The notes beneath the pieces were generated by a model. The model was not told where the DNA came from. It saw only the letters and a program-made list of their open reading frames with translations, and ran no database searches. Below are positions 1 to 52,523 of a stretch of 64,000 nt of DNA, piece by piece. The DNA comes from Malacoraja senta (taxonomy: Eukaryota). Every line of letters begins with the position of its first letter. Positions within the stretch are counted from its first letter, which is position 1. A program made the translations under genes and the position numbers. Where the stretch lies: the NCBI GenBank assembly GCA_038087875.1, contig CM075985.1, forward strand, positions 25,544,001-25,608,000, read 5' to 3'.

Positions 1-519
1 CAGAAGGCTACCAAGGAGATGTGGTTTGTAGAATGATATATCCATGAGCCATTCTCAAAAGTGTTGGTCAAATATAAGACAACGGGCCTATTAATTGGTC
101 TACATCAAACTAGGCATCATATGGTTTCAGCTAAGATACTTTGCATAATTGTGAAAGAGATCAAGGGAAAGTTCCTCTGGTTATTTGTCACTTAGAACAA
201 CATGGTCAGAGACATATTTGTTCCATCAATCAATAATTGGGATATTTTTGTACCCAGAAAGTCAGCCCTCAAAATACTAATTTTAGATGCTTGAGGTTTC
301 TGTCCTTTGAAGCTTTTAGACAATAACTAGACTAAGTGGGACCCGTTGGGTCCCAGCATCACACGGGAGGGCTGGTCATCTAACGCAATATTCCACCTCT
401 CCACCAATTCCAATATTGCTCGCCAGTGGGGGCGGGGGGGGGGCTTTCTGTTGTGCTAGTATGGATGTTATGGGCCGAAGGTATGGTTTCCAGAGGGCTA
501 GTATAGACATTGTGGGCCA

Positions 520-790
520 AATGGATTCTTGGGCTGGCAGCTCAGTCACTGAGGCCTGGCAGTACAGTCACTCGGACCTGGCAGGCTGGCAGCTGAGAAA
601 CTGCCAGAAATTCTGCCCAAAACAGGAGACAGACTGTGAGAGAGAAGGGGGAGAGGGTGGACTGAATGGATTATTGAGCTGGCAGTTCAGTCACTTACGG
701 CTGGTGGGCTGGCAGTTCACTTACTCACGGCTTGTGGGCTGGCAGTGCAGTCATTCAAGCCTAGTATGCTGGCAGTTCACTCAGTCACCC
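520..790. repeat. Degenerate ~30-bp minisatellite (GGCTGGCAGTTCAGTCACT core) inside the Helitron
   Basis: Repeated ggctggcag...tcact units. Confidence 0.6.
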
Positions 791-825
791 ATCCTCACTT
801 CACCCCCCACTCTTCTCCTTGTCAT

Positions 826-1026
826 TCACACACACACACACACACACACACAGATTCATTCACACACACACAGACTCATTCACACACACACATACACACA
901 CACAGACTCACTCAAACAGACACACACACACACAGACTCACTCTCACACACACAGACTCATTCACGCACAGACACAGACTCATTCACACACACACACATA
1001 CACATACACACAGACTCATTCACACA
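826..1026. repeat. Compound (CA)n / CAGACTCATT microsatellite
   Basis: Directly visible; explains the His/Thr-rich spurious ORFs. Confidence 0.95.
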
Positions 1027-21866: not shown

Positions 21867-23070
21867 CTATGAAATGGAAATAATTTGCATTAATTAAAAC
21901 AAATCCTTTGACTTATTAAAAAAATTAAGTGATGATTATTTTTGACAAATGAATGATTCAATCATTCAATAAATCAATAATTCAATGATTTCTTGAAACT
22001 TTATTGTCACGTACCGAGGTGCTGTGAAATGCTTTGTTTTGCATGCAACCTTGTGTCGTCACATTTGGCATGAGGCAGCAGGTCTCTCCTCCCCACCGGG
22101 TACCCCTTCTCGGCAGCCCCCTCCCTCCCTACCGGGCCCCCCCCTTTTTTATCCCCCAATCACCCCCCTCCCCCCTCGCCAGGTAGCTCTCGATGGTCCC
22201 CTTGCTTTCCGATGACCTTCCTCACTTTATGGCAGAGCCTTAGGGAACTGATGGCATTTTCATTTGTAAATGTGAAGACGTGCCATATATCCAAATATGC
22301 AAGTCCCAAACTTCCTGACAGATTCTTGACAGTATGCATACATTTTGTGCTCTTACGCTAAGAAATTAAACTGCACTTATGCAATGGAATTTGCTCTTGG
22401 ATCATGCAACAGATTAAAGTTGTGTTGCAGGGAATAAAAAGTTAGCTACCATTCTATAAATTATATATAGATTTGTTATTATAGCAATATTTAGAAGTGC
22501 TTTTTAACTTTTTAAAAATTCAGTCCTTTTTTCATTTTTATAAAAATGTTTTTAGAAGCCAATATTTGACTGTTTCGATAGACAGCAAAGATGGAGGCAT
22601 AGCAATCTCATCTATCAAAAGTTTCTGCAGCAGTTTCATTGATTGGCCTCATGCTAACCCACCATCAGACAAGGTAACATTGGGTCTCACTGATGCAAAA
22701 CCCTTGAATGGCCTTACAGATTCAAACTACCTTGGTGTATCTTGGCGCTAATGGGTTGTTGGCCCTCACTTAGCAAAATGTAAGCTAATATTTTACATCT
22801 TGATCTTTGTTTACAATGGCCATGCATATCTACAAAAATATTAAGGTTTATGAAGCTCTAAGGAATATAGGGAAGAAAGTAAAAACATAAAGTACACCAT
22901 GCTTATGTTAGCTTATACGTATGTGTCATAAATAGGCCATTGTATCACTTCTTTGCTAGAGCAATACAAAAATGAGTGTATTACCCTGTACTCTCACCAA
23001 GCTTAACCAGTTAAAATGGTACTCTCATTGATTATGTTTATATTCTTATTAACAACATCCTATCTCATAC

Positions 23071-30609: not shown

Positions 30610-31503
30610 CTTGTATGTGAACTCGATAAGAAGAAGAACTCGGCTAATTTTGATTTCTGTCCACAGTAACAATTTGAATGTAGAGGCTGAATTAAGAATG
30701 TGAAGAATAGAAGCAGAGGAAGGCCACAAGGCCCCTTGTGCTTGCATCACCTTTCATTAAAATCACAAATGAGAGATGACTCAGTTCATTCATTCATTCA
30801 TTCATTCTACAATTTCAATTTCCAGTCTTCTTCAAGAATGAATTCCAATAATTTACTACTCTCTGGTCTTGTGTTCAATCCTGGTGGTCCAATCCCTTAA
30901 ACTAAGAAAGCAACTGGTGAATCAATTATACATATCGAATCTCTCCACTGTCACACTTCAGGTAATATGTAGTGGCTGTGAGTGCACTTTTCTCTCAAGT
31001 GACTAATCATGTTTTTCAATGACTATTAGCTACATTCTCAGCCTGTGTACTCCCTTAATTTCCTCTCTCAAGATTATTTCCCCTTAAAGATACTTGCCAA
31101 CTTTCTAACAAATGCATATGTGTGCAAATGAAGTTGCAACACAGGTTGGGAATGTTGCTAATCGTCATTGAAAAACATAATCAGTCACTTGAGGGAGAAG
31201 TGCATTCACAACCACTACATGCTACCTGAGGTGTGACTGTGGGGAGATTCAACATGTGTAATTATATTCAACAAAACTGTGAAAACCTACCATGTTTGTT
31301 AATAAAGCAAGAAAATATGCTGGAAAAACTAAGTTATGATGTTAGAAATGTCCAATCAGAAAAATTGCTAAAACTTATCATGTGTTTACAACATGTATCT
31401 TCAAAAAGTAGTACTGGAAAAAATAAAATTCTGGAGCTTAAGACGTTTAAAATGTCCACTCATTGTCTTAAGGTCTGCCATTACTAAAAGGCATTTGACT
31501 CAC

Positions 31504-31563
31504 CTGTTGTGGAACTAACGGTAGACTCAGTCGTGACAGTTGTCGCTGTTGTTGGTGTTGTTT
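31504..31563 (-). CDS. Mucin PTS micro-exon (60 nt)
   Basis: ETTPTTATTVTTESTVSSTT; cag/gtgagt; phase 1-1. Confidence 0.9.
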
Positions 31564-31999
31564 CTGGTGAAAGAGTACAAATGAGTTTACAACCACATTA
31601 TACAACTTGAGCAGAAATTGAATTATGTAAGAATCAGCATTTATTAAGGAGCCAGGCCCAAATTCTTTTGACCTTGATCACATATACCTAATCTGAATTT
31701 ACCTAGAATGTTTGTTTGGTCAATCACAATGACAGCCCCACGATAAATGCACCCTGTTTACTAAGCAGATGATCCATGCGACAATTATTTTTTTTTCAGA
31801 ATTTCTGTATCCAAATCTGCAGTGAAATTTATTATATGCACAAAAGTGTAATTGGAAAAAGACACTTTTGCAAAGACATGCAATGACTGAGTCTCACAAG
31901 ATTGAGGTGCATAAGTTAGAGCACGGAATGTTGAAACTAATCATCCTTGATTTCACTAAAATACACATGCAAACATACTTGAAAGATACTATAACTAAC

Positions 32000-32035
32000 C
32001 TGATGTGGTACTTGTACTCGTCTCAGTTGTTGTTT
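32000..32035 (-). CDS. Mucin PTS micro-exon (36 nt)
   Basis: ETTTETSTSTTS; tag/gttagt; phase 1-1. Confidence 0.85.
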
Positions 32036-32213
32036 CTAGTGAAAGAAAAGAATAACATACTCAACAAAGGCAACCAAGTTGAATTGAAACCCATTTGAGA
32101 AACGTTTAACAATACTTGAGAATAATTGAGTAGCTGGCACATTCCATTAAAACATTGTACCATATGTATTATTTTCCTAATCATAAGATTATTGCAGGGC
32201 AAATTGTGTATAG

Positions 32214-32917
32214 ACAATCCTGTTTATATCAATGGGACAATGGTGGAGAGAGTCAAAAACTTCAAATCCCTGGGGGTGCATATTTCCGACGATCTTTCCT
32301 GGACCCAGCACACTGATGCAATTATAAAGGAAGCACATCAGCGCCTCTACTTCCTGAGAAGATTACGGAGATTCGGTATGTCAAAGAGGATTCTATTGAA
32401 TTTCTACAGGTGCACAATAGAAAGCAAATTGACTGGTTGCATCATGGCCTGGTTCGGCAACTTGAACGTCCAGGAGCGGAAAAGACTGCAAAAAGTTGTG
32501 AACACTGCCCAGCCCATCACCGGGTCTGACCTCCCTACCATCGAAGGGATTTATCGGAGTTGCTGTCTCAAAAAGGCAGCCAACATCATCAGAGACTCAC
32601 ACCATCCTGGCCACACACGCATCTCACCACTGCCATCGGGAAGAAGGTATAGGAGCCTGAGAACTGTAACTTCCAGATTCAGGAACAGCTTCTTCCCAAC
32701 AGCCATCAGGCTATTACACACTACAAACTCATAAGCTCTGATTTACAATAGACTATTATTATTATTATTATTATTGCACTGTTATTGTTTGTTTATTTCA
32801 GTATGTGTGTGTCTCATTTATCATATTATTTATTATGATTACATATTCTGTTGTGCTGCAGCAAGTAAGAAGTTCATTGTTCTATCTGGGACATATGACA
32901 ATAAAACACTCTTGACT
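32214..32917 (+). mobile_element. 5'-truncated Rex1/Babar-type LINE (DUF1891-like C-terminus)
   Basis: PVYINGTMVERVKNFKSLGVHISDDLSWTQH..AHQRLYFLRRLRRFG..RFRNSFFPTAIRLL; 3' UTR with (TTA)n and gacaataaaacactcttgact tail. Confidence 0.9.
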
Positions 32918-33984
32918 ACTACAGTTCTTTGTCTTTGTAATTCAACAGATGAGTATTTCAGCGTCAACAGGAAAAAATATTGCTGTGACAAAGTATTCCA
33001 GAAACCTCAGGCTGTATGGTCAACTTTGACTGTATGTTAATCAGAACTGTCTAACCTTGCACATCCACACCACCACTAGTATCAATGGACTTGGTTATTG
33101 GCAAAGAAAGAAGTGGTCCTTTTCTCAGAAAGATTAGACATTAAATATAAATTCTTGTTTACTCAAATTAAAATAATGACATTGCATGAGGGATATGCAT
33201 CATGTGCAGGCAGCTAAGATTAATTTATCTTTTGAAATGTTCAGCAGTAACATTGCGGGCTGAAGAGCCTGTTCCTGTGCTATGTGTTCAATGTGTTATG
33301 TATACTTAATGGATGCCACATATTTATTTAATATGTCTGATTTGTTCAGAATCATAAGTTATTAAAGGCCATTTAATTAAAGGATGATTGGCTTAAATAA
33401 TTTGTATATTATCCTGACATATGTTCAATAATATCACTATTCTTAAATGCCACTAAGCTTGGTATACACAGTTTAAAATGGACTCACAGACCCTAGCTGT
33501 GCAATATTGACCCATTGTCTTATTTCAGTGCTGCCGTTGACAATGTTTTGCTCTTAATGCACCAATTGTAGATTTCATGGAAGTTCAACCGTGTTTTCCA
33601 AAGACTGCATGGTCTACTTTGTTATCTATCTGTCTGTCTGTCTGTCTGTCTGTCTATTTATCTAGTGTTCTGGAAACTCTGCCAAAACAGTACACAATAG
33701 AGCGACAATTTTGGCCCACCTTACTCACCATTGTCCTGCGGTGTGCATTAGCCAAGTTTAGTTCTGATTAATGTTATATTTTACAAGTTATTGACATTTT
33801 AAACTTTACAAAAAACACTTTTCCACTTGCCCTTCCCATCAGCCGTGTTTGACATCACAACAACGTCACAATGGGACTTTAAACTTAAAAAAATCACATT
33901 TCCACTTGCCCTGCCCGTCACCTGCATGACCGCGCGTGCGCAGTGGGCCCGGTATCCGCGTGTGCGGCATTTGAAATAACCGTG

Positions 33985-34217
33985 ATGCTGAGGCTGAGGC
34001 TAGGTCTGTGCGTGGCGGCGCTGCTGCTCTGGCCCTTCGGGGAAGGAGAGGAGTGGGACCCAGGTCAAGGACTGGGCCGCAGCCTCGGCCTCCCCCTCCC
34101 CCAGCTCCAGGCTGCTCAGCCCATCCCTCCCGTTTGCCCCCACCTCAAGTACAACTACATCGCTGATGTGGTGGAGAAAACGGAGCCGGCGGTGGTTTAC
34201 ATCGAGATCCTGGGGAA
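33985..34217 (+). pseudogene. HTRA2: Captured HTRA2/Omi exon-1 fragment
   Basis: [48 protein letters not shown] versus human HTRA2 (from memory) [49 protein letters not shown]. Confidence 0.85.
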
Positions 34218-34341
34218 GTGGGAGGGAGAAGAGGGGGTAGGGTTAGAGAGGAGGGGGGGAGGTATGGAGTGGGCGATAGAGGGAGAGGAGGGCAGTGGGG
34301 GAGGTGAGGAGGGTGATTTGGAGGGGTGGGATAGGAGGGAG

Positions 34342-34428
34342 AGTTCAAGTTCAAGTTCAAGTTCAAGTTCAAGTGAGTTTATTGTCATGTGCCTTGATAG
34401 GACAATGAAATTCTTGCTTTGCTTCAAC
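34342..34428 (-). mobile_element. Short LINE 3' tail with (CTTGAA)n, inserted only in Helitron copy 1
   Basis: Reverse complement aagcaagaatttcattgtcctatc..gacaataaactcacttgaacttgaa resembles the Rex1-type tail at 32860-32917; absent from copy 2. Confidence 0.75.
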
Positions 34429-35540
34429 GGCGAAGAGGAGAGGGGAAAGAAGAGAGATGGTGAAGAGGAGGGTGAGGGAGTGGTGGGGAAGAGGGGGAAT
34501 GGAAGAGCATAGAGGTAGGAAGAGGGATGGTGAGGTAATGGAGGAGGGGAGGGGGAAGAGATAGGAGGGGAGGGGGGATGAGTGGAGGCAGAGGAGGTTT
34601 GATTGAGATTGGGGAGAGGGAGGATAATGGAGGTGGGGAATAGAGGACTGAAGAGGGAGAGTGAGATGCGTTCACATTGATCTTATATTTTACATTATTG
34701 ACATTTAAAAAATTTTAAATGTCGCAGACGCGCTCCCACTTGCCGGCCGCGCCTGCGCAGTTGGGTGAGGGTTGCCGTGACTCACGTCACAATGGGGATC
34801 TCTGGTGTCAAAACGGGAACCTGTCAGCCGCGCCTGTGCAGTTGGGGGCTATGGGTGAGTGGTGGAATATTGTGTCGGAGGAACGAGCCCAACAGGTCCA
34901 CACTTGGTCTAGTTATTACAAATGGTGTGTGATGTGTTTGCACACAATCAGCATTTGTGTTCCAATTTTCCAAATGTACCAGAACCTCACTTGTGCAAAA
35001 TGTGCTGATTCTAATCATGCTTTAACTGGGTATTGCTGAATATCCGAAGAAACTGAGAAAACGAAGACAACAACTCAGTTGGACACAAAGTGCTGAATAA
35101 GGAACTGCAGATGCTGGGTTACACAAAATGACCCAAAGTGCTGAAGAAATCAGCACATCAGGCAGCATCACTGGAGAAAGTGGATAGGTGATGTTGCGGG
35201 TCACGATCCTTCTACAGCTTGGAGACGGAGCTGATCCTAAATAATACATATCCATGTTCTCCCTAGAGGCAGCCTGCCTCGCTGATTACCTCATCACTTT
35301 GTGTCATTTTGTGTAATCTAGCATTTGCGGTTCCTTGCTTCTGTTCCTCCACAATCACTAAGCTTTTTGAAGATTACTTTATAACTTGGTATAATTGGAT
35401 TGAGCCAAACATTGAAATCTTGACGTATATTTTCACCTTGTACATCAATAATGTAAGCAAAGAAGCAAGAAGAGGAAAGAGCTGCTGTTGACCCTGTTGT
35501 CATAAGATTTGCACTGTTTACAGTGAGTGGTTTGACTCAC

Positions 35541-35594
35541 CTGTTGTGGTGGACTCCGTTGTGCCAGTTGTTGAAGATGTTGTTGGTGTTGTTC
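35541..35594 (-). CDS. Mucin PTS micro-exon (54 nt)
   Basis: GTTPTTSSTTGTTESTTT; cag/gtgagt. Confidence 0.9.
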
Positions 35595-36243
35595 CTGGTG
35601 AGAGAGTAAAATGTGTTTACAACTTGAGAGTAGGCTGAATTTTATAAATATTCCATGATGAAATTTATATTTCAATTTAGAAATTTAGCCAAATTCTGCT
35701 TTGTCTGCTTTGCTCATCATTTTTGTTAGGATGGGATCCATTAAATTCTGAACTTTTCAGTGCATTTTTATCCACCTCCACAGTGATATACAGTATATCA
35801 AATAGACTGGTGTGAACAAGAAAATATACATTTCTGAAGACAAATATTGGCTCCTGCTCTTTCAAATGTTCACAGTGCTAATGCACAACACATTGCAAAT
35901 CATCACTATTTTACTAACTAGTATGTATCCTGGAACATAGACTAACCTATCCATGTGCAAATGCTCTTAGACTTTTACTCTAAGTCTGCTGGGCAAAGGG
36001 AAGAGTCTTTTCTCTGAAAAGGCATTGCTGCTGAAATTCTTATCCATGTCTATTGAATGCAAAATGCACCTTAAAAAAATACTGCTGACAGTCAGAACCA
36101 CAGACTCTCACATATTTTCAGTGAGAAACATTAAATTTTAGGAGCAAAACTAATAGGGAAGAATGAAGTATAGAGCTTTATTTTAACAGATCATACAGGT
36201 ACAGAAGGATAAGATAATGTGATTAATAGGTGATGTTACTAAC

Positions 36244-36285
36244 CTGATGTAGTGCTGGTAGTGGTCTCAGTTGTTGGTGTTGTTT
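36244..36285 (-). CDS. Mucin PTS micro-exon (42 nt)
   Basis: ETTPTTETTTSTTS; tag/gttagt. Confidence 0.88.
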
Positions 36286-36615
36286 CTAGAGAAAGTAAAA
36301 AGCTTATATTTAACCAATGCAGGCAAGATGAATGTCAAAATGAATTGGTATGCAGTTGAGAAACCTTTAATAGGAATTCATGTGCTGGCACATTTTATTA
36401 AAATGTTGTACCAAGTGTTGTTTTCTTAATCATAAATGCAGTTGGTGGGCATACTATACTACTACATGTCTTTCCCTTTGTAGATAGCTGGTAGAGCTGT
36501 AGCCGCATAGACCAGAGACTCTGGTTCCACCTTGACCGCGGGTGCTGTCTGCGTGCACATTCTCCCTTTTACAGCGTGGATGGCCTCCAGGTATTTGATA
36601 GATGTTGTTACTAAC

Positions 36616-36663
36616 CTGTTGTAGTGCTGGTAGTGGTCCCAGTTGTTAATGTAGTTGTTGTTT
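36616..36663 (-). CDS. Mucin PTS micro-exon (48 nt)
   Basis: ETTTTLTTGTTTSTTT; cag/gttagt. Confidence 0.88.
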
Positions 36664-37153
36664 CTGGTGAAAGAAAATAATGCTATGGTCAACTAAGGCA
36701 GCCAAGAGAAATAGGTATGCAGTATTGAATCTTCAACAGGAATTCCTGAACTGGATCATTTGATGAAAACGATTTTGAGTTGACATTGTATTAGTGTGTG
36801 ATGTTTCTGAAAACAATGTGCATTTATGTTTGCATATCCAAAAGTGACATGATCCACAACCTGCACAAAATTTGGAGGTTATAATTACGCTTTTGCTTGT
36901 TCCTGCTGAGTATACGTGGAAATGAGAAGCAATAAACTCATGTTCTTCCACATTTCCTAAGTTTTTCTAAGATTACATCATAACTTGATATAATTGATTT
37001 GAGGCAAACATTGACATCTTGACATGTATGTTCACATCATCTATCTCAATAATGTAAGCAAAGATGCAAGAAGTAAGCCAGGGACCTGATCTTAGGAGTG
37101 TTGACCCATTGGCTTAAAATGTGTCACTGCTTACTGAAAGTGGTTTGACTCAC

Positions 37154-37216
37154 CTGTTGTGGAACTGGTGGTGGGCTCAGTTGTGCCAGTTGTCGAAGAT
37201 GTTGTTGGGGTTGTTC
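37154..37216 (-). CDS. Mucin PTS micro-exon (63 nt)
   Basis: GTTPTTSSTTGTTEPTTSSTT; cag/gtgagt. Confidence 0.9.
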
Positions 37217-37387
37217 CTGGAGAGAGAGTACAAACATGTTTACGATTTTAATTGCAAGAGCTGCAGCCACATAATGCCAGAGACCCGCGTTCTATCCTGG
37301 TTTCTCGTGCTGTCTGTGTGGTGTTTGCACGTTCTCCCTTTTACCGTGTGGGTTCCCTCCAGGTGTTTGGTAGATGTTGTTACTAAC

Positions 37388-37435
37388 CTGATGTAGTGCT
37401 TGTAGTGGTCCCTGTTGTTGATGTTGGTGTTGTTT
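37388..37435 (-). CDS. Mucin PTS micro-exon (48 nt)
   Basis: ETTPTSTTGTTTSTTS; tag/gttagt. Confidence 0.88.
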
Positions 37436-37787
37436 CTAGTGAAAGAAAAGAATGCTATGTTCAACTAAAGAAACCTCCAACAGGAATTCATCAGCTGGCA
37501 CATTTTAATAAATTGTTTTACGGTGGTTATTTCCTTCATCGTAGCTTGTGGGAGGGTCTACTTTGCTGCTACATTTCTTCATCTCTGTCAATCAGCAGTT
37601 GACTATTTTGCTCCCATCTCGAACAATCCTACACTCTTGACACTTTGATTGTGGATTTCATGAAGAATTACAAGGCCCTTTTTATTTCAGAAGGTGTTCT
37701 CCTATTTTCCGAGTGAGAATTATTAAATGTTTGCGGCAACACCATGAACAGGCAAGAGGGATATATAGAGCTTAACTTTGACGTTAC

Positions 37788-37838
37788 CTGATGTAGTGCT
37801 GGTTGTGGTCTCAGTTGTTGATGTGGTTGGCTTTGTTT
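37788..37838 (-). CDS. Mucin PTS micro-exon (51 nt)
   Basis: ETKPTTSTTETTTSTTS; cag/gtaacg. Confidence 0.88.
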
Positions 37839-39311
37839 CTGGAGAAGAAAATATTATATTCAATCAAGACAGCTAGGTCAATTGGTACACATTTTAGAAA
37901 CCTTGAACAGACGCACATGAGCTGGTACATTTTATTAAAACATTTATTCAGGTGTTATTTTCTTCATCGTATAACAAAGTTGGACTACCTCATTTCTTTC
38001 TCATTGTCAATCAGCAGCTGATCATTTTAGTGCCATTATAAACAATTATGTTCTCTTATGTTCTGATGTCAGATATCATTGAGGCTCAAACATGTCTTCC
38101 AGAAACTGCAGGTGATCAGACATGCCTATTGAAAGGTGTCAAGCTCAGTGCATCTTTTAATATTACTGTGGGCAATTAGAACCATAACGTCTTTCCATAT
38201 TCAGTGCCATCACAAACAATCATGCATTCTTAATGCATTACACTTGACATTTCCCTCATCGTAGAAAAAAGTGGGAGGACTTAGTATGCTGCTAAATTTC
38301 TTTATCTCTGTCAACTAGCATATTAATACTTTTCTGACATCTCAAACATTCCTGCGTTCTTGACACATCAATTGTGGATTTCCTGGGTATTGAACCATGT
38401 CTTGCAGTATGGACTTCATTATGCCATTCTTACTAACAGTATAGTTGCACAATTCATGACAATAATGTAAGCGAAGATGCAAGAATGGAGCCACAGAGCT
38501 GATATTAGAAATGTTGACCCATTGTCCAAAGATTAGCCAATGTTGGGGTCAAGGAAAGAGCGTTCACGTCGCGGCCCTGTTTCCACCAATCTTTCCACCA
38601 CCGCGCACAAGAAGCACAAGAAGTGACAAGTCAGACACCATTGTATGCAGATGCCGGGAAGTGTGTTCAGCTCTGGCTGAACAACTTCTAATCTTGTGTG
38701 TGGGCTCGATAAGAAGATAAGACGATATACTAAATGGAGGCCACATACTTATATGGGGGAGAAAACTGCAAATGCTGGTTTAAATCAAAGGTTGACACAA
38801 AATGCTGGAGTAACTCAACGGGTCAGGAAGCATCTCTGGTGAGATTTCCTTCATATTTATTTAATGTGTCTGATTTGTGAAGGATGATAGGCTTAAACAA
38901 TTTGAATATCATCATGAGCTGTGTTTAATAATATTACTGTTCTTAAATGCCACTAAGCTTGGTATACACAGTTTCAAATGGACCCACAGACCCCAGCAGT
39001 GAAATATTGACCCATTGTCTTATTTCAGTGCCACTGCTAAACAATCTTTTGCTCTTAATGTACCAATTGCGGATTGTATGGAAGTTCATCCGTGTTTTCC
39101 ATAGACTGTATGGTCTACTTTATACCATTATTACTAATAGTGTGTGATGTGTTTGCACACAATGAGCATTTGTGTTCCATTTGTCCAAATGTGCCAGAAC
39201 CTGAAATTGTGTAAAATGTGCTGATTCTAATCATGCTTTAGCTTGTTATTGCTGAATATCAGAAGAAAATGAGAAACAGAAGCCAACAACTCATTTCGAC
39301 ACAAAGTGCTG

Positions 39312-39556
39312 AACAAGGAACTGCAGATGCTGGATTACACAAAATGATCCAAAGTGCTGAAAAAATCAGCATGTCAGGCAGAATCATTGGAGAACATGGA
39401 TAGGTGACGTTTCGGGTCAGGACCCTTCTACAGTTTGAAGAAGAGAGCCGATCCTAAACAACACTTATCCATGTTCTCCAGAGATGCTGCCTGACTCGCT
39501 GATTACTTCAGCATTTTGTGTCATTTTGTGTAATCCAGCATTTGCGGTGCCTTGTT
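39312..39556. mobile_element. Fold-back Penelope terminal-repeat remnant (paralogs near 35095-35340, 43935-44180, 48545-48790, 52700-52945)
   Basis: ~95-bp inverted arms around a spacer containing gacgtttcgggtcaggacccttctacag. Confidence 0.75.
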
Positions 39557-39775
39557 TTCCCCAACTCGGTTACTCCACAATTCCTAAGCTTTTTGAAGAT
39601 TACTTTATAACTTGGTATAATTGGATTGAGCCAAACATTGATATCTTGACGTGTATATTTTCACCTTGTACATCAATAATGTAAGCAAAGAAGCAAGAGG
39701 TAAGTGCTGCTGTTTGAAATGTTGACCCGGTTGTCTTAAGATTTGCCACTGTTTACAGTGAGAGGTTTGACTCAC

Positions 39776-39829
39776 CTGTTGTGGTGGACTCAGTTGTGCC
39801 AGTTGTTGAAGATGTTGTTGGTGTTGTTC
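39776..39829 (-). CDS. Mucin PTS micro-exon (54 nt)
   Basis: GTTPTTSSTTGTTESTTT; cag/gtgagt. Confidence 0.9.
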
Positions 39830-40248
39830 CTGGTGACAGAGTAAAATGCATTTACATCTTGAATTGTAAGAGTCCGTAATCAGCTTCTGTATGACTCATC
39901 ACATTTTCATGAGAGTCGGCTGAATTTTATAAATATTTCATGATGAAATTTAGATTTAAATTGAGAACTTTTGCCAAATTCTGCTTTGTGTGCTTTGGTC
40001 ATCATTTTGTTAGGATGGGATCCATTAAATTCTGAACTTTTCAGTGCATTTTTATCCACCTCCACAGTGATATACAGTATATCAAATAGACTGGTGTGAA
40101 CAAGAAAGATACATTTCTGAAGACAAATATTGACTCCTGCTCTTTCAAAAGTTCACAGTGCTAATGCACAACACATTGCAACTCATCACAATTTTACTAA
40201 CTAGTATGTATCCTGGAACCTATCCATGAGCAAATGCTCTCAGAGTAA

Positions 40249-40566
40249 ATGCTCTCTCCCACTTTCCCGAGTTACTCACGAACTGTGCCGAGTTTTCCCC
40301 TTGATTCGAACTCGGAGAATTACGATAATAGCCATTCGTAGGTACTCGGGGCTATTTTTTAAACTCGTGGACATTTTTCAACATGTTGAAAAAAGTCCCG
40401 ACTTACCTGATGCCCCGAGTTCCTACGGCTGGCATTACGAGCCGCTATGAAACATGTACGGCCTCCTACCAGCTCGCTACCACTATTCCCCGTCATTCCC
40501 CGAGTTTGAATCAAGGGGAAAACTCGGGAGAGTTCGTGAGTAACTCGGGAAATTGGGATAGTGTCT
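40249..40566. mobile_element. Harbinger-type MITE (unit 2)
   Basis: ~75-bp imperfect TIRs (tcccactttcccgagttactcacgaact ... agttcgtgagtaactcgggaaattggga), flanked by TAA/TTA. Confidence 0.8.
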
Positions 40567-40837
40567 TTAGAGTAAAAGTCTGCGGGGCAAAGGGAAGAGT
40601 CTTATCTCTGAAAAGGCACTGCTGCTGAAATTCTTATCCATGTCTATTGAATGCACAATGCACCTTAAAAAAATACTGCTGACAGTCAGAACCACAGACA
40701 CTCACATATTTTCAGTGAGAAACATTAAATTTTAGGAGCAAAACTAATAGGGAAGAATGAAGTATAGAGCTTTATTTTAACAGATCATACAGGTACAGAA
40801 GGATAAGCTAATGTGATTAATAGGTGATGTTACTAAC

Positions 40838-40879
40838 CTGATGTAGTGCTGGTAGTGGTCTCAGTTGTTGGTGTTGTTT
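40838..40879 (-). CDS. Mucin PTS micro-exon (42 nt)
   Basis: ETTPTTETTTSTTS. Confidence 0.88.
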
Positions 40880-41209
40880 CTAGAGAAAGTAAAAAGATTA
40901 TATTTAACCAATGCAGGCAAGATGAATGTCAAAATGAATTGGTATGCAGTTGAGAAACCTTTAATAGGAATTCATGTGCTGGCACATTTTATTAAAATGT
41001 TGTACCAAGTGTTGTTTTCTTAATCATAAATGCAGTTGGTGGGCATACTATACTACTACATGTCTTTCCCTTTGTAGATAGCTGGTAGAGCTGTAGCCGC
41101 ATAGACCAGAGACTCTGGTTCCACCTTGACCGCGGGTGCTGTCTGCGTGCACATTCTCCCTTTTACAGCGTGGATGGCCTCCAGGTATTTGATAGATGTT
41201 GTTACTAAC

Positions 41210-41257
41210 CTGTTGTAGTGCTGGTAGTGGTCCCAGTTGTTAATGTAGTTGTTGTTT
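41210..41257 (-). CDS. Mucin PTS micro-exon (48 nt)
   Basis: ETTTTLTTGTTTSTTT. Confidence 0.88.
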
Positions 41258-41747
41258 CTGGTGAAAGAAAATAATGCTATGGTCAACTAAGGCAGCCAAG
41301 AGAAATAGTTATGCAGTATTGAATCTTCAACAGGAATTCCTGAACTCGATCATTTGATGAAAACGATTTTGAGTTGACATTGTATTAGTGTGTGATGTTT
41401 CTGAAAACAATGTGCATTTATGTTTGCATATCCAAAAGTGACATGATCCACAACCTGCACAAAATTTGGAGGTTATAATTACGTTTTTGCTTGTTCCTGC
41501 TGAGTATACGTGGAAATGAGAAGCAATAAACTCATGTTCTTCCACATTTCCTAAGTTTTTCTAAGATTACATCATAACTTGATATAATTGATTTGAGGCA
41601 AACATTGAAATCTTGACATGTATGTTTGCATCATCTATCTCAATAATGTTAGAAAAGATGCAAGAAGTAAGCCAGGAACCTGCTCTTAGAAGTGTTGACC
41701 CATTGGCTTAAAATTTGTCACTGCTTACTGAAAGTGGTTTGACTCAC

Positions 41748-41810
41748 CTGTTGTGGAACTGGTGGTGGGCTCAGTTGTGCCAGTTGTTGAAGTTGTTGTT
41801 GGGGTTGTTC
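41748..41810 (-). CDS. Mucin PTS micro-exon (63 nt)
   Basis: GTTPTTTSTTGTTEPTTSSTT. Confidence 0.9.
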
Positions 41811-41981
41811 CTGGAGAGAGAGTACAAACATGTTTACGATTTTAATTGCAAGAGCTGCAGCCACATAATGCCAGAGACCCGCGTTCTATCCTGGTTTGTC
41901 TTGCTGTCTGTGTGGTGTTTGCATGTTCTCCCTTTTACCGTGTGGGTTCCCTCCAGGTGTTTGGTAGATGTTGTTACTAAC

Positions 41982-42029
41982 CTGATGTAGTGCTTGTAGT
42001 GGTCCCAGTTGTTGATGTTGGTGTTGTTT
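41982..42029 (-). CDS. Mucin PTS micro-exon (48 nt)
   Basis: ETTPTSTTGTTTSTTS. Confidence 0.88.
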
Positions 42030-42409
42030 CTAGTGAAAGAAAAGAATGCTATGTTCAACCAAGGAAACCAAGAGGAATAGGTACCAAGTAAAGAAACCTC
42101 CAACAGGAATTCATCATCTGCCACATTTTAATAAATTGTTTTACTGTGGTTATTTCCTTCATCGTAGCTTGTGGGAGGGTCTACTTTGCTGCTAATTTCT
42201 TCATCTCTGTCAATCAGCAGTTGACTATTTTGCTCCCATCTCGAACAATCCTACACTCTTGACACTTTGATTGTGGATTTCATGAAGAATTACAAGGCCC
42301 TTTTTATTTCAGAAGGTGTTCTCCTATTTTCCGAGTGAGAATTATGAAATGTTTGCGGCAACACCATGAACAGGCAAGATGGAAATATAGAGCTTCACTT
42401 TGACGTTAC

Positions 42410-42460
42410 CTGATGTAGTGCTGGTTGTGGTCTCAGTTGTTGATGTGGTTGGCTTTGTTT
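42410..42460 (-). CDS. Mucin PTS micro-exon (51 nt)
   Basis: ETKPTTSTTETTTSTTS. Confidence 0.88.
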
Positions 42461-44399
42461 CTGGAGAAGAAAATATTATATTCAATCAAGACAGCTAGGT
42501 CAATTGGTACACATTTTAGAAACCTTGAACAGAAGCACATGAGCTGGTACATTTTATTAAAACATTTATTCAGGTGTTATTTTCTTCATCGTATAACAAA
42601 GTTGGACTGCCTCATTTCTTTCTCATTGTCAACCAGCAGCTGATCATTTTAGTGCCATTATAAACAATTATGTTCTCTTATGTTCTGATGTCAGATATCA
42701 TTGAGGCTCAAACATGTCTTCCAGAAACTGCAGGTGATCAGACATGCCTATTGAAAGGTGTCATGCTCAGTGCATCTTTTAATATTACTGTGGGCAATTA
42801 GAACCATAAAGTCTTTCCATATTCAGTGCCATCACAAACAATCATGCATTCTTAATGCATTACACTTGACATTTCCCTCATCGTAGAAAAAAGTGGGAGG
42901 ACGTAGTATGCTGCTAAATTTCTTTATCTCTGTCAACTAGCATATTAATACTTTTCTGCCATCTCAAACATTCCTGCGTTCTTGACACATCAATTGTGGA
43001 TTTCCTGGGTATTGAACCATGTCTTGCAGTATGGACTTCATTATGCCATTATTACTAACAGTATAGTTGCACAATTCATGACAATAATGTAATCCAAGAT
43101 GCAAGAATGGAGCCACAGAGCTGATATTAGAAATGTTGACCCATTGTCCAAAGATTAGCCAATGTTGGGGTCAAGGAAAGAGCATTCACGTCGCGGCCCT
43201 GTTTCCACCAATCTTTCCACCACCACGCACAAGAAGCACAAGAAGTGACAAGTCAGACACCATTGTATGCAGATGCCGGGAAGTGTGTTCAGCTCTGGCT
43301 GAACAATTTCTAATCTTGTGTGTGGACTCGATAAGAAGATAAGACGATATACTAAATGGAGGCCACATACATATTTGGGGGAGAAAACTTCAGATGCTGG
43401 TTTAAATCAAAGGTTGACACAAAATGCTGGAGTAACTCAACAGGTCAGGAAGCATCTCTGGTGAGATTTCCTTCATATTTATTTAATGTGTCTGATTTGT
43501 GAAGGATGATAGGCTTAAACAATTTGAATATCATCATGAGCTGTGTTTAATAATATTACTGTTCTTAAATGCCACTAAGGTTGGTATACACCGTTTCAAA
43601 TGGACCCACAGACCCCAGCAGTGAAATATTGACCCATTGTCTTATTTCAGTGCCACTCCTAAACAATCATTTGCTCTTAATGCGCCTATTGCGGATTGTA
43701 TGGAAGTTCTTCCGTGTTTTCCATAGACTGTATGGTCTACTTTATACCATTATTACTAATAGTGTGCGATGTGTTTGCACACAATGAGCATTCGTGTTCC
43801 ATTTGTCCAAATGTGCCAGAACCTGAAATAGTGTAAAATGTGCTGATTCTAATCATTCTTTAGCTTGTTATTGCAGAATATCAGAAGAAAATGAGAAACA
43901 GAAGCCAACAACTCAGTTGGACACAAAGTGCTGAACAAGGAACTGCAGATGCTGGATTACACAAAATGACCCAAAGTGCTGAAAAAATCAGCATGTCAGG
44001 CAGAATCATTGGAGAACATGGATAGGTGACGTTTCGGGTCACGACCCTTCTACAGTTTGAAGAAGAGAGCCGATCCTAAACAACACTTATCCATGTTCTC
44101 CAGAGATGCTGCCTGACTCGCTGATTACTTCAGCATTTTGTGTCATTTTGTGTAATCCAGCATTTGCGGTGCCTTGTTTCTGTTCCAACTCGGTTACTCC
44201 ACAATTCCTAAGCTTTTTGAAGATTACTTTATAACTTGGTATAATTGGATTGAGCCAAACATTGAAATCTTGACATGTACATTTTCAACTTGTATATCAA
44301 TAATGTACGCAAAGAAGCAAGAGGTAAGAACTGCTGTTAGAAATGTTGACCCTGTTGTCTTAAGGTTTGCCACTGTTTACAGTGAGTGGTTTGACTCAC

Positions 44400-44453
44400 C
44401 TGTTGTGGTGGACTCAGTTGTGCCAGTTGTTGAAGATGTTGTTGGTGTTGTTC
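44400..44453 (-). CDS. Mucin PTS micro-exon (54 nt)
   Basis: GTTPTTSSTTGTTESTTT. Confidence 0.9.
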
Positions 44454-44873
44454 CTGGTGAGAGATTAAAATGCGTTTACAACATGAATTGTAAGAGTCCG
44501 TAATCAGCTTCTGTATGACTCATCACATTTTCATGAGAGTCGGCTGAATTTTATAAATATTTCATGATGAAATTTAGATTTAAATTTAGAACTTTTGCCA
44601 AATTCTGCTTTGTGTGCTTTGGTCATCATTTTGTTAGGATGGGATCCATTAAATTCTGAACTTTTCAGTTCATTTTAATCCACCTCCACAGTGATATACA
44701 CTATATCAAATAGACTGGTGTGAACAAGAAAAGATACATTTCTGAAGACAAATATTGATTCCTGCTCTTTCAAAAGTTCACAGTGCTAATGCACAACACA
44801 TTGCAACTCATCTCAATTTTATTAACTAGTATGTATCCTGGAACCTATCCATGAGCAAATGCTCTCAGAGTAA

Positions 44874-45192
44874 AGGCCCTCTCCCACTTTCCCGAGTTAC
44901 TCACGAACTGTGCCGAGTTTTCCCCTTGATTCGAACTCGGAGAATTACGATAATAGCCATTCGTAGGTACTCGGCGCTATTATTTAAACTCGTGGACATT
45001 TTTCAACATGTTGAAAAAACGTCCCGACTTACCTGATGCCCCGAGTTCCTACGGCTGGCATTACGAGCCGCTATGAAACATGTACGGCCTCCTACGAGCT
45101 CGCTACCACTATTCCCCGTCATTCCCCGAGTTTTAATCAAAGGGAAAACTCGGGAGAGTTCGTGAGTAACTCGGGAAATTGGGATAGTGTCT
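44874..45192. mobile_element. Harbinger-type MITE (unit 3)
   Basis: TAA|AGGCCCTCTCCCACT ... GGGATAGTGTCT|TTA; same element as at 40249. Confidence 0.8.
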
Positions 45193-45464
45193 TTAGAGTA
45201 AAAGTCTGCTGGGCAAAGGGAAGAGTCTTATCTCTGAAAAGGCACTGCTGCTGAAATTCTTATCCATGTCTATTGAATGCACAATGCACCTTAAAAAAAA
45301 TACTGCTGACAATCAGAACCACAGACTCTCACATATTTTCAGTGAGAAACATTAAATTTTAGGAGCAAAACTAATAGGGAAGAATGAAGTATAGAGCTTT
45401 ATTTTAACAGATCATACAGGTACAGAAGGATAAGCTAATGTGATTAATAGGTGATGTTACTAAC

Positions 45465-45506
45465 CTGATGTAGTGCTGGTAGTGGTCTCAGTTGTTGGTG
45501 TTGTTT
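45465..45506 (-). CDS. Mucin PTS micro-exon (42 nt)
   Basis: ETTPTTETTTSTTS. Confidence 0.88.
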
Positions 45507-45831
45507 CTAGAGAAAGTAAAAAGATTATATTTAACCAATGCAGGCAAGATGAATGTCAAAATGAATTTGGTATGCAGTTGAGAAACCTTTAATAGGAATT
45601 CATGTGCTGGCACATTTTATTAAAATGTTGTACCAAGTGTTGTTTTCTTAATCATAAATGCAGTTGGTGGGCATACTATACATGTCTTTCCCTTTGTAGA
45701 TAGCTGGTAGAGCTGTAGCCGCATAGACCAGAGACTCTGGTTCCACCTTGACCGTGGGTGCTGTCTGCGTGCACATTCTCCCTTTTACAGCGTGGATGGC
45801 CTCCAGGTATTTGATAGATGTTGTTACTAAC

Positions 45832-45879
45832 CTGTTGTAGTGCTGGTAGTGGTCCCAGTTGTTAATGTAGTTGTTGTTT
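45832..45879 (-). CDS. Mucin PTS micro-exon (48 nt)
   Basis: ETTTTLTTGTTTSTTT. Confidence 0.88.
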
Positions 45880-46369
45880 CTGGTGAAAGAAAATAATGCT
45901 ATGGTCAACTAAGGCAGCCAAGAGAAATAGTTATGCAGTATTGAATCTTCAACAGGAATTCCTGAACTGGATCATTTGATGAAAACGATTTTGAGTTGAC
46001 ATTGTATTAGTGTGTGATGTTTCTGAAAACAATGTGCATTTATGTTTGCATATCCAAAAGTGACATGATCCACAACCTGCACAAAATTTGGAGGTTATAA
46101 TTACGCTTTTGCTTGTTCCTGCTGAGTATATGTGGAAATGAGAAGCAATAAACTCATGTTCTTCCACATTTCCTAAGTTTTTCTAAGATTACATCATAAC
46201 TTGATCTAATTGATTTGAGGCAAACATTGAAATCTTGACATGTATGTTTGCATCATCTATCTCAATAATGTTAGAAAAGATGCAAGAAGTAAGCCAGGGA
46301 CCTGATCTTAGAAGTGTTGACCCATTGGCTTAAAATTTGTCACTGCTTACTGAAAGTGGTTTGACTCAC

Positions 46370-46432
46370 CTGTTGTGGAACTGGTGGTGGGCTCAGTTGT
46401 GCCAGTTGTTGAAGTTGTTGTTGGGGTTGTTC
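46370..46432 (-). CDS. Mucin PTS micro-exon (63 nt)
   Basis: GTTPTTTSTTGTTEPTTSSTT. Confidence 0.9.
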
Positions 46433-51259: not shown

Positions 51260-52523
51260 AACTCTCATCTTGCTTGTTTGTTTGTTTGTAAGCGTGCGTG
51301 CATGTTCTGGAAACTCCGCCAAAACAGTACAAGATAGAGCTACAAGTTTGGCCCACCTTACTCACCATTGTCCTGCGGTGTGCACTAGCCAAGTTTAGTT
51401 CTGATTAATGTTATATTTTACAAGTTATTGACATTTTTAACGTTTAAAAAATCACTTTTCCGCTTGCCCTGCCCATCAGCCGTGTTCGACATCACAATAA
51501 TGTCACAATGGGATCTTTAAACTTTAAAAATTAACTTTTCCACTTGCGTTGCCCATCAGCTGCATGACTGCGCGTGCTCAGTGGGCCAGGAATCCGTGCG
51601 TGTGGATTTAAAAATAACTGAAAGTCTCCCCGCGCGTCAGCAGTGGGCCCGGTATCCGCGTGTGCGGGATTTGAAATAACCGCGGTGCTGAGGCTGAGGC
51701 TAGGTCTGTGCGTGGCGGCGCTGCTGCTCTGGCCCCTCGGGGAGGGAGAGGAGCGAGACCCAGGTCAAGGACTGGGCCGCAGCCTCGGCCTCCGCCTCCC
51801 CCTCCCCCTCCCCCTGCTGCAAGCTGCTCGGCCCGTCCCCCCGTCAGCCCCCACCTTGAGTACAACTATATCGATGATGTGGTGGAGAAAACAGAGCCGG
51901 CGGTGATTTACATCGAGATCCTAGGGAGGTGAGGAGGGAGAAGAGGGGGTAGGGATGGAGAGGTAGGGAATGGGCGATAGAGGGAGAGGAGGGCAGTGTG
52001 GAAGGTGAGGAGGGTGATTGGGAGGGGTGGGATAGGAGGGAGAGGAGAGGGGAAAGAAGAGAGATGGTGAAGAGGAGGGGGAGGGAGTGGTGGGGAAGAG
52101 GGGGAATGGAAGAGAATAGGGGTAGGAAGAGGGATGGTGAGGTAATGGAGGAGGGGAGGGGGAAGAGAGAGGAGGGGAGGGGGGTGAGTGGAGGAAGCAG
52201 AGGAGATTTGTTTGAATGTGGGGAGAGGGACGATGATGGAGGAGGGGAATAGGGGACTGAAGAGGGAGAGTGAGATGCGTTCACATTGATCTTATATTTT
52301 ACATTATTGACATTTAAAACTTTTAAAATGTCGCAGTCGCGGCCTCCCACTTGCCGGCTGCGCCGGCGCAGTTGGGTGAGGGTTGCCGTGACTCGCGTCA
52401 CAAAGGGGATCTCTGGCGTCAAAACGGGAACATGTCAGCCACGTCTGTGCAGTTGGGGGCTATGGGTGAGTGGTGGAATATTGTGTCGGGGGAACGGGCT
52501 CAACGGGTCCACACTTGGTCTAG
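51260..52523 (+). mobile_element. Non-autonomous Helitron carrying an HTRA2 fragment (copy 2; 5' end in the gap)
   Basis: Ends gggctcaacgggtccacacttggtCTAG|T; collinear with 33625-34912. Confidence 0.85.
51685..51928 (+). pseudogene. HTRA2: Captured HTRA2 exon-1 fragment, frameshifted, donor retained
   Basis: [11 protein letters not shown]...LQAARPVPP / [28 protein letters not shown] followed by gtgagg. Confidence 0.85.

What the first reader, a model, noticed from the sequence alone, without database searches (positions are those of the whole stretch)
33625..34912. Helitron carrying exon 1 of the mitochondrial protease HTRA2/Omi, in a mucin intron
Seen: element bounded by A|TC and by a degenerate hairpin plus CTAG|T. 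Three empty paralogous sites within this window (ggtctactttatacca|ttattactaatagtgtg) show the insertion boundaries and the lack of a TSD. Inside lies a GC-rich fragment encoding a TM-like helix ([11 protein letters not shown]), a remnant of the AVPS-type IAP-binding motif (AQPI, or ARPV in copy 2) and [22 protein letters not shown]. It stops at a GT donor followed by purine-rich intron-like DNA, indicating genomic rather than retro capture. Established: Helitron gene-fragment capture is known in maize, bats and lepidopterans. Inference: this may be a gene-capturing Helitron family in a cartilaginous fish, spreading HTRA2 pieces. The fragment is antisense to the mucin transcript.
Basis: partly seen in the sequence, partly recalled or inferred. 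Interest (0 to 1): 0.8.

Follow-up and report, generated by a model that had tools for sequence, protein, structure and literature searches.

The report
Dead Helitron carrying HTRA2 exon piece
This is one decayed copy of a rolling-circle transposon (Helitron) that picked up the end of the first exon and the start of the first intron of the host protease gene HTRA2, lying in an intron of a mucin-like gene of a skate-like fish. It is a known kind of event that this scan has already met elsewhere in the same genome.

Summary
A 1.29-kb insertion (33621-34912) is present in two of five paralogous 4.6-kb units and absent from three. It has no target-site duplication and no terminal inverted repeats.

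Its 3' end (...GGTCTAG|T) recurs at two independent places: window 327-405 (minus strand) and 64 bp upstream of the HTRA2 start codon in Leucoraja erinacea. In the window copy at 327-405, an intact 8-bp hairpin sits 10 nt before CTAG. That is a canonical Helitron terminus; in the reported copy the hairpin has decayed.

The cargo is HTRA2 (PDB E 1.5e-7, against 1e-3 for HTRA1). It is only the last ~230 bp of exon 1, plus the splice donor and purine-rich intron-1 DNA, so capture was genomic. The ATG is specific to this copy.

Contigs from runs of three organisms show tens of distinct cargo variants and thousands of copies' worth of the Helitron modules.

- The two window copies are one insertion followed by duplication of the unit.
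- The 5' end is uncertain.

Two other follow-ups of this scan reached the same reading on other DNA of this genome. I found no paper that describes it. Verdict: a new member of a known kind, of moderate-to-low interest.

The parts
33621..33665 (+). Left junction zone: 'gtta', then TC at 33625-6 (putative Helitron 5' end, preceded by A33624), then a (TCTG)n microsatellite and 'tatttatctag'. Not shared with copy 2.
   Evidence: Flank homology to the empty sites stops at 33620. Copy 1 and copy 2 align only from 33666 = 51303. Read laying skipped 33615-33667 as repeat.
33666..33984 (+). Left Helitron-type body made of repeated modules that recur in the right body: the 'ttatattttaca..ttgacatttaaa' module, 'ccacttgcc' twice, 'acgtcacaatggg' and 'gcgcgtgcgcagtggg'. 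33685-33855 is very high copy.
   Evidence: Internal direct repeats D5, D7, D11, D13 and D18. Summed contig depth is 6,000-22,000 against about 60 for the flank in X1, with 46-78 distinct contigs per run.
33988..34217 (+). Captured 3' part of HTRA2 exon 1: the LGLG membrane-helix region, the position of the IAP-binding motif, and the start of the protease domain up to ...YIEILG(R). The ATG at 33985 is not ancestral.
   Evidence: PDB hits: HTRA2 E 1.5e-7 against HTRA1 1e-3. Skate HTRA2 P0007 is 72% identical. The DNA alignment to L001:10097-10375 starts at 33988. In organisms B and C other copies carry G at 33985.
34218..34343 (+). Splice donor (GT, weakened to AA|GTGGGA here; AG|GTGAGG in copy 2 and in the parent) and purine-rich start of HTRA2 intron 1.
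   Evidence: 34136-34262 matches L001:10293-10419 at 84.5%, crossing the exon border at L001:10375/6. 34252-34344 matches L001:11063-11154 at 77%. This stretch is low-complexity.
34344..34433 (.). Later secondary insertion, absent from copy 2: (AGTTCA)n plus about 55 bp of an extremely abundant repeat.
   Evidence: Copy 2 aligns 33930-34343 and 34434-35200 without it. Depth reaches 203,000 in X1. Relatives lie at 50866-50918 and 32863-32915.
34434..34660 (+). Further purine-rich DNA derived from HTRA2 intron 1.
   Evidence: 34429-34651 matches L001:11267-11491 at 73%, E 3e-34, collinear with the exon match. Low-complexity, so weaker evidence.
34661..34912 (+). Right Helitron body and 3' terminus: terminal module 34853-34912, decayed hairpin remnant 34885-34899, CTAG 34909-34912, followed by host T at 34913.
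   Evidence: the terminus is shared with window 327-405(-) and L001:9859-9937 (nhmmer E 7e-15 to 5e-25). Depth is 1,300-75,000 inside and falls to 58 beyond 34938.
51260..52523 (+). Paralogous copy of the same insertion (copy 2). Cargo lies at about 51685-51930 with a frameshift and no ATG. The left junction is hidden in the N gap 51090-51259.
   Evidence: Flanks are 94-96.5% identical to those of copy 1; the element is 88-94% identical.
39116..39134 (.). Empty paralogous site (tacttt atacca|ttattac). Two more lie at 43743/43750 and 48362/48369.
327..860 (-). Independent member of the same Helitron family. It has an intact 3' hairpin (355-337; 8-bp stem, 3-nt loop), CTAG at 330-327 and host T next. 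Its 5' side runs into a TG-rich satellite and the N gap.
   Evidence: hairpin z -3.46; 1 of 200 shuffles folds as well. 84.5% identical to L001:9736-9950.

Best explanation
The insertion at 33621-34912 is a dead, non-autonomous Helitron of a family that is very abundant in skates.

**Cargo.** It carries the last ~230 bp of exon 1 of the host gene HTRA2, the splice donor, and about 350 bp of purine-rich intron 1, in the same orientation as the element. The cargo lies between two partly duplicated stretches of Helitron body.

**History at this locus.** It inserted once, without a target-site duplication and 5' of a T, into an intron of a tandemly repeated mucin-like gene, antisense to that gene. 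The 4.6-kb unit that held it was then duplicated, which gave copy 2.

**Capture (inferred).** The cargo was copied as genomic DNA from the skate-lineage HTRA2 gene. In Leucoraja erinacea that gene has a 3' end of the same Helitron family 64 bp upstream of its start codon, in the same orientation. This points to capture by failure to stop at the Helitron terminator, followed by an internal deletion, or by template switching to neighbouring DNA during rolling-circle copying.

**Mobility (inferred).** Movement depended on a Rep/helicase supplied in trans.

**Present state.** The copy is inert. Its hairpin has decayed, the donor is weakened, copy 2 is frameshifted, and I found no sign of expression.
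For: **Insertion**
- Filled and empty sites, with no target-site duplication.
- No terminal inverted repeats.

**Helitron terminus**
- The 3' terminus ...GGTGGAATATTGTGT...CCCAACNGGTCC.ACTTNGTCTAG occurs at three independent insertions in two genomes, each followed by T.
- An intact 8-bp GC-rich hairpin lies 10 nt from CTAG in window 355-337 (z -3.46).

**Copy number**
- Depth rises 20- to over 1000-fold inside the element and drops at 34912.
- 38-48 distinct contigs cover the cargo at 34157 in each of four runs from three organisms. Most carry T there, as the parental gene does.

**Cargo identity**
- HTRA2 rather than HTRA1/3; nearest proteins are shark and skate HTRA2.
- Vertebrate exon 1 products end at ...EI[LV]GR, exactly where the cargo's coding similarity stops.
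- DNA similarity to L. erinacea crosses the exon/intron border. Similarity to whale shark stops at the exon end.

**Capture and history**
- A family terminus lies at L001:9859-9937, 64 bp upstream of the ATG at L001:10001.
- One insertion, then duplication: flanks are 94-96.5% identical between copies 1 and 2, but 88-89% identical to the empty units.
Against: - **5' end not demonstrated.** TC at 33625 sits in a microsatellite, the left flank differs from the empty sites by 4-6 nt, copy 2's junction is in an assembly gap, and family-level conservation starts only near 33670-33710.
- **No hairpin in this copy.** Copies 1 and 2 have no significant hairpin.
- **No autonomous partner examined.** No Rep/helicase element with these termini was looked at.
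- **Parental-locus element differs.** The Helitron at the parental locus belongs to a different body variant; only about 75 bp of terminus is shared.
- **Capture model needs an extra step.** The cargo starts at codon ~32, not right behind a terminus, so simple read-through needs a further deletion. The pre-cargo DNA shows no significant similarity to the 64-bp spacer.
- **Coincidence is possible.** Termini occur about once per 28 kb of the skate DNA seen here, so one within about 1 kb of a given gene by chance is a few-percent event, not negligible.
- **Depths are not true copy numbers.** The contig depths are assembler word depths summed over contigs.
Confidence: 0.82

Rival explanations
1. 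The carrier is a cut-and-paste element of the PIF/Harbinger or 'Pack' type. It makes a 3-bp TTA/TAA target duplication, and the HTRA2 piece is its cargo.
For: TTA stands on both sides of the insertion (tttgTTA|tcta ... ctag|TTAttac). The other two termini are followed by TTA and TAA. An earlier first-reader note (s1-203292) read another HTRA2 carrier as bounded by terminal inverted repeats.
Against: There are no terminal inverted repeats. The conserved end has the Helitron architecture of hairpin, 10 nt, then CTAG. The empty sites hold a single TTA only if a further 5-bp deletion is assumed at the left flank.
Confidence: 0.05
2. The insertion did not transpose as one unit. It is a patch of DNA, made of two Helitron remnants with an HTRA2 fragment between them, that was copied into the mucin intron by double-strand-break repair or segmental duplication. 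The cargo's multiplicity comes from segmental duplications.
For: The left edge is imprecise and has a microsatellite. The only two full copies I could read are paralogous. Few contigs (1-3 per run) share the exact left cargo junction at 33985.
Against: The right edge coincides to the base with the family terminus CTAG|T. Tens of distinct cargo-bearing contigs occur in each of three organisms. Earlier notes of this scan list at least 9 carriers on other pieces of this genome; two of them were followed up with the same reading, though these are leads and not independent proof.
Confidence: 0.08
3. The empty units arose by deletion. On this view the 1.29 kb is ancestral to the tandem unit and was lost in the lineage of the three 'empty' units.
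For: The three empty units are 97% identical to each other. A single loss followed by amplification would therefore suffice.
Against: A deletion would have to end exactly at a transposon terminus. The sequence inside is multi-copy transposon DNA plus a foreign gene fragment.
Confidence: 0.04

Closest known systems
HelibatN elements of vesper bats carrying the NUBPL promoter, first exon and part of intron 1 (Pritham and Feschotte 2007; Thomas et al. 2014; cited from my own knowledge, not read here)
   Same: A non-autonomous canonical Helitron (3' hairpin plus CTAG, no target-site duplication) that captured the 5' end of a host gene at the DNA level, including a splice donor and intron start, and amplified it to many copies.
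   Different: The host is a skate-like cartilaginous fish and the source gene is HTRA2. Only the 3' part of exon 1 is present, with no promoter or start codon. No chimeric transcripts were shown or tested here.
Maize Helitrons with gene-fragment cargo (Morgante 2005; Lai 2005; Du 2009; cited from my own knowledge)
   Same: Families are defined by short shared termini with interchangeable internal content. Cargo is genomic fragments that keep their introns. Proposed capture routes are terminator bypass or filler DNA.
   Different: There is a single fragment here rather than multi-gene chimeras. The genome is an animal's.
Other cargo-bearing Helitrons noted by this scan in the same genome (ALG13 exon 1, s1-174991; HTRA2, s1-206904 and s1-175011)
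   Same: The follow-up agents reached the same reading: decayed Helitron copies carrying a first-exon fragment with its donor, amplified in skate genomes.
   Different: This copy lies in a tandem mucin-like array, which supplies empty sites and a duplication history. I could not compare sequences with those loci.
Helentron / Helitron2 elements common in teleost fishes (from my own knowledge)
   Same: Rolling-circle transposons of fishes.
   Different: Those have short asymmetric terminal inverted repeats, insert between T and T, and lack the CTRR end. The family here has CTAG with a single 3' hairpin and no inverted repeats.

Membership tests
Canonical Helitron (Helitron1), non-autonomous | 3' end CTRR | tested here: met
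   CTAG at 34909-34912, 52520-52523, 330-327(-) and L001:9934-9937.
Canonical Helitron (Helitron1), non-autonomous | GC-rich hairpin about 10-12 nt upstream of the 3' end (family level) | tested here: met
   Window 355-337(-): TGGGACCC-aac-GGGTCCCA, 10 nt from the end, z -3.46, 1 of 200 shuffles folds as well. A 5-bp version is present in L001.
Canonical Helitron (Helitron1), non-autonomous | The same hairpin in the reported copy itself | tested here: not met
   34879-34912 and 52490-52523 fold no better than shuffles (z +1.06 and +0.52). The homologous positions are mutated, which marks a decayed copy.
Canonical Helitron (Helitron1), non-autonomous | 5' end TC | tested here: inconclusive
   TC at 33625-6 follows A33624, but it lies in a (TCTG)n tract. 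Copy 2's junction is in an N gap. No other 5' end of the family could be read.
Canonical Helitron (Helitron1), non-autonomous | Insertion between host A and T, without target-site duplication | tested here: met
   Three empty sites show no duplication. T follows CTAG at 3 of 3 independent termini. The A side rests on one imperfect junction.
Canonical Helitron (Helitron1), non-autonomous | No terminal inverted repeats | tested here: met
   the only inverted pairs are internal.
Canonical Helitron (Helitron1), non-autonomous | Autonomous partner encoding Rep/helicase with the same termini | not tested
   No genome-wide search tool was available. The only lead is an unchecked first-reader note of a Rep/helicase ORF elsewhere in this genome (s1-203309).
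Canonical Helitron (Helitron1), non-autonomous | Dispersed multi-copy family sharing the ends | tested here: met
   Depth and contig counts in four runs of three organisms. Independent termini in the window and in L. erinacea.
HTRA2-derived sequence (rather than HTRA1/3/4) | Best similarity to HTRA2; exon 1 boundary at ...EILGR; similarity continuing into HTRA2 intron 1 | tested here: met
Processed (retro) copy of HTRA2 | Intron-less, poly(A) tail, flanking target-site duplication | tested here: not met
   The cargo keeps the donor and intron 1 DNA. There is no poly(A) tail and no duplication.
PIF/Harbinger or Pack-type element with terminal inverted repeats | Terminal inverted repeats plus a 3-bp TWA duplication | tested here: not met
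   No terminal inverted repeats. TTA next to both ends is compatible with this family, but a Helitron's AT-rich target explains it too.

The most novel reading that the evidence does not exclude
Skates may harbour a recently active canonical Helitron family that repeatedly parks in promoters and picks up first exons with their splice donors (HTRA2 here; ALG13 and SAC3D1 by other notes of this scan). On this reading, the L. erinacea HTRA2 locus still shows the donor arrangement, with the terminator 64 bp before the ATG. Some of the hundreds of scattered exon-plus-donor cassettes would then drive chimeric transcripts or antisense regulation of their host genes.
Probability: 0.15. Interest if true: 0.65.

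Novelty: new member of a known kind. Interest (0 to 1): 0.35.

Why it matters
Helitron gene capture is well documented in maize, bats and insects. I found no paper linking Helitrons with HTRA2. Among the top-ranked hits of two searches, none described exon-capturing Helitrons in cartilaginous fishes.

This locus adds three useful pieces:
- **Empty and filled sites side by side** inside one tandem array. They fix the 3' boundary and show that no target-site duplication was made.
- **A relative time line:** the units diverged, the element inserted, and then the unit was duplicated.
- **A possible donor arrangement.** A terminus of the same family lies 64 bp upstream of the parental HTRA2 start codon in Leucoraja erinacea. 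A whole-genome analysis could test whether it records how the capture happened.

For this particular copy I expect no function.

Tried and rejected
1. **Other cargo copies through protein searches.** The search for homologous proteins returned only the bamboo-shark exon 1 product. The representatives search returned true HTRA2 genes, not transposon copies.
2. **Whale-shark 'HSPA12B-like' protein ending in HTRA2 exon 1 (P0002).** I suspected an exonised transposon copy. It is a gene-model fusion with the real HTRA2 exon 1, because the rest of HTRA2 follows 2 kb downstream.
3. **Pre-cargo DNA (33921-33987) as part of the 64-bp spacer between the L. erinacea Helitron end and the ATG.** The local alignment is no better than shuffles, so I rejected this.
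4. **Hairpin in the reported copy.** Not significant.
5. **More family termini by profile search.** None beyond the four in the window and L001, and none in 45.8 kb of whale shark.
6. **Rfam and Pfam on the element.** Nothing relevant.
8. **Retroposon reading on the minus strand with a (CAGA)n tail.** Rejected: there is no target-site duplication, and the conserved, precise end is the hairpin-CTAG end.
Full report
**What is in the sequence**

A self-comparison of the window shows that 33380-33620 and 34913-35200 are the two halves of a sequence that is contiguous in three other places: 39121/39128, 43743/43750 and 48362/48369. All of them belong to a tandem array of roughly 4.6-kb units.

The right edge of the insertion is exact (...cacttggtctag|ttattac). 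No host bases are duplicated.

The left edge is less clean:
- Homology to the empty sites ends at 33620.
- The six bases 'atacca' of the empty sites are replaced by 'gtta'.
- Then comes TCTATC(TGTC)n, a microsatellite.

A second filled site lies at 51.1-52.5 kb. It occupies the same position of a paralogous unit, and its left junction falls in the assembly gap 51090-51259.

Identities between the units:

| Comparison | Identity |
|---|---|
| Flanks, filled unit 1 vs filled unit 2 | 94-96.5% |
| Elements, copy 1 vs copy 2 | 88-94% |
| Filled units vs empty units | 88-89% |
| Empty units vs each other | 97% |

So there was one insertion, followed by duplication of the unit that carried it. 'Copy 2' is not a second transposition.

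Threonine/serine/proline-rich micro-ORFs occur 23 times in the window, all on the minus strand. This agrees with a mucin-like gene on that strand. The insertion lies between two such exons, with its cargo antisense to the gene.

**The cargo**

- Against solved structures it matches HTRA2 (E 1.5e-7), starting just behind the mature N-terminus AVPS and running to YIEIL. It matches HTRA1 and HTRA3 only at about 1e-3.
- An exhaustive profile-free search finds shark and skate HTRA2 first: Chiloscyllium, Heterodontus, and Leucoraja erinacea at 72% over residues 18-77.
- Many exon-1-only products of vertebrates end at ...EI[LV]GR. The coding similarity of the cargo therefore stops exactly at the natural end of exon 1.
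- The parental AG|GTGAGG donor is kept in copy 2 and weakened to AA|GTGGGA in copy 1.
- Real HTRA2 proteins have 30-120 more residues in front of the LGLGLG helix.
- The DNA alignment to the L. erinacea gene (locus L001, exon 1 = 10001-10375) begins at window 33988 = L001:10097, about codon 32.
- In contigs of two other organisms the base at 33985 is G, not A, and copy 2 has GTG. The ATG is therefore an accident of this copy.

The cargo is thus the 3' ~230 bp of exon 1, without the start codon or the mitochondrial presequence.

Similarity to L. erinacea continues across the exon border: 34136-34262 matches L001:10293-10419 at 84.5%. It is followed, in the same order, by weaker matches of the purine-rich DNA to intron 1 (73-77%). 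That DNA is low-complexity, so I give the intron matches less weight. Against whale-shark HTRA2 the similarity stops at the exon end.

Capture was therefore genomic, not through mRNA, and it happened in the skate lineage.

Copy 2 is frameshifted between the ARPV motif and the protease start. ARPV is the native shark form of the motif at the AVPS position (P0001-P0003). Nothing suggests that coding capacity has been preserved.

**The carrier**

The last 60-80 bases of the insertion recur at two independent places:
- In the window at 405-327 on the minus strand.
- In L. erinacea at L001:9859-9937.

A profile built from the termini scores these at E 5e-25. It scores the two copies of the finding at about 1e-14. 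It finds nothing else in the window, in L001, or in 45.8 kb of whale shark.

All the termini end in GTCTAG and all are followed by a T in AT-rich host DNA.

In the copy at 355-337 an 8-bp GC-rich hairpin with a 3-nt loop (TGGGACCC-aac-GGGTCCCA) ends 10 nt before the terminus. It folds better than 199 of 200 shuffles. In the reported copies the same positions are mutated and no hairpin forms.

The element has no terminal inverted repeats. Taken together, these features are the canonical Helitron 3' end.

The 5' end remains open. TC at 33625 preceded by A fits the rule. However, it sits in a microsatellite, copies 1 and 2 share sequence only from 33666, and family-level conservation in other genomes starts near 33670-33710.

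**Copy number**

I laid Logan contigs of four runs (two of organism A, one each of B and C; names are coded) on 33400-35100 at 85% likeness.

| Region | Summed word depth in X1 |
|---|---|
| Both flanks | about 60 |
| 33685-33855 | 6,000-22,000 |
| 5' part of the cargo | 50-90 |
| Exon end and donor | 400-500 |
| 34597-34824 | 1,300-3,000 |
| 34825-34881 | 75,000 |
| Beyond 34938 | 58 |

These sums are not copy numbers, but the contrast with the flanks is large, and it ends at the CTAG terminus.

Distinct contigs covering the cargo number 38-48 at 34157 in every run, and 5-29 further upstream. Most carry T at 34157, the parental TTC (Phe) codon, where this copy has TAC. The cargo therefore exists in tens of sequence variants or more in three organisms.

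Joints such as 33806 to 34716-34736 fit elements that lack the cargo, although the internal repeats make them ambiguous. The far greater depth of the body modules than of the cargo shows that most family members lack it.

First-stage notes of this scan list at least nine HTRA2-bearing Helitrons on other pieces of this genome. Two follow-up agents reached the same reading. I treat those notes as leads.

**How the capture may have happened**

The cargo lies between two stretches of Helitron body that repeat each other: the AT-rich 'ttatattttaca...ttgacatttaaa' module, 'ccacttgcc', 'acgtcacaatggg' and 'gcgcagt(t)ggg'. The left stretch lacks the hairpin and CTAG.

At the parental locus of L. erinacea a terminus of the same family lies 64 bp upstream of the start codon, in the orientation of the gene. 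This is the geometry expected for terminator bypass.

Caveats on this point:
- The element at the parental locus is a different body variant.
- The cargo starts 160 bp further in, so a deletion would also be needed.
- The pre-cargo DNA does not match the spacer.
- Termini occur about once per 28 kb in the 85 kb of skate DNA I saw. A chance terminus within 64 bp in the right orientation is about a 0.1% event. One 'somewhere suggestive' near the gene is a few-percent event.

Template switching during rolling-circle copying would also explain the duplicated body segments and remains equally possible. I put about 0.4-0.5 on terminator bypass from that arrangement.

**Comparison and verdict**

The element works like, and passes most membership tests of, a non-autonomous canonical Helitron. 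The closest published parallel is the NUBPL-carrying HelibatN of bats (cited from my own knowledge).

What the tests could not settle:
- The 5' end is inconclusive.
- The autonomous partner was not tested.
- The hairpin is 'not met' in this copy only because the copy has decayed.

No paper in the held library links Helitrons with HTRA2, and none of the papers listed by my two other searches described exon capture in cartilaginous fishes.

I found no evidence of expression and no preserved reading frame. This is a new member of a known kind. The scan had already found it on other DNA of the same genome.

Noticed in passing
window 327-1026 (minus strand): An independent member of the same Helitron family with an intact 3' hairpin. 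Its upstream side is a long TG-rich satellite (units like gaatgagtctgtgtgtg) that runs into the N gap 1027-1634. A similar satellite lies in L. erinacea HTRA2 intron 2 (L001:14000-14700).
   Followed up: partly
window 34344-34433; also 50866-50918 and 32863-32915: (AGTTCA)n plus about 55 bp of an extremely abundant repeat (summed depth 200,000 to 2.5 million in the four runs). It was inserted into copy 1 after the unit duplication, so it is absent from copy 2. The repeat was not identified.
   Followed up: no
window 34825-34881: The subterminal Helitron module is far more abundant than the rest of the element (depth 75,000 to 3.7 million). In organism B it shows many 'goes back about 31' joints, which suggests tandem arrays or a satellite derived from the Helitron 3' region.
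   Followed up: no
L002 (Rhincodon typus NC_063332.1) 39276-39779 and 41802 onward: The RefSeq model XP_048456612.1 'heat shock 70 kDa protein 12B-like' ends in the true exon 1 of HTRA2. The neighbouring model holds the rest of HTRA2. This is a likely annotation fusion, not a transposon copy.
   Followed up: yes
window 31496-50646 (minus strand): There are 23 short Thr/Ser/Pro-rich open segments, all on the minus strand, repeated with the 4.6-kb unit (mucin-like micro-exons). The units fall into two subfamilies: the filled pair, and the empty ones, which are 97% identical to each other.
   Followed up: partly
L001 9300-9560 (minus strand): Just upstream of the Helitron remnant at the L. erinacea HTRA2 promoter lies a repeated coding-looking stretch, visible on the plus strand as two near-identical copies of 'cttctt(g)ggccatcac...'. 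It may be another transposon fragment. I did not examine it.
   Followed up: no
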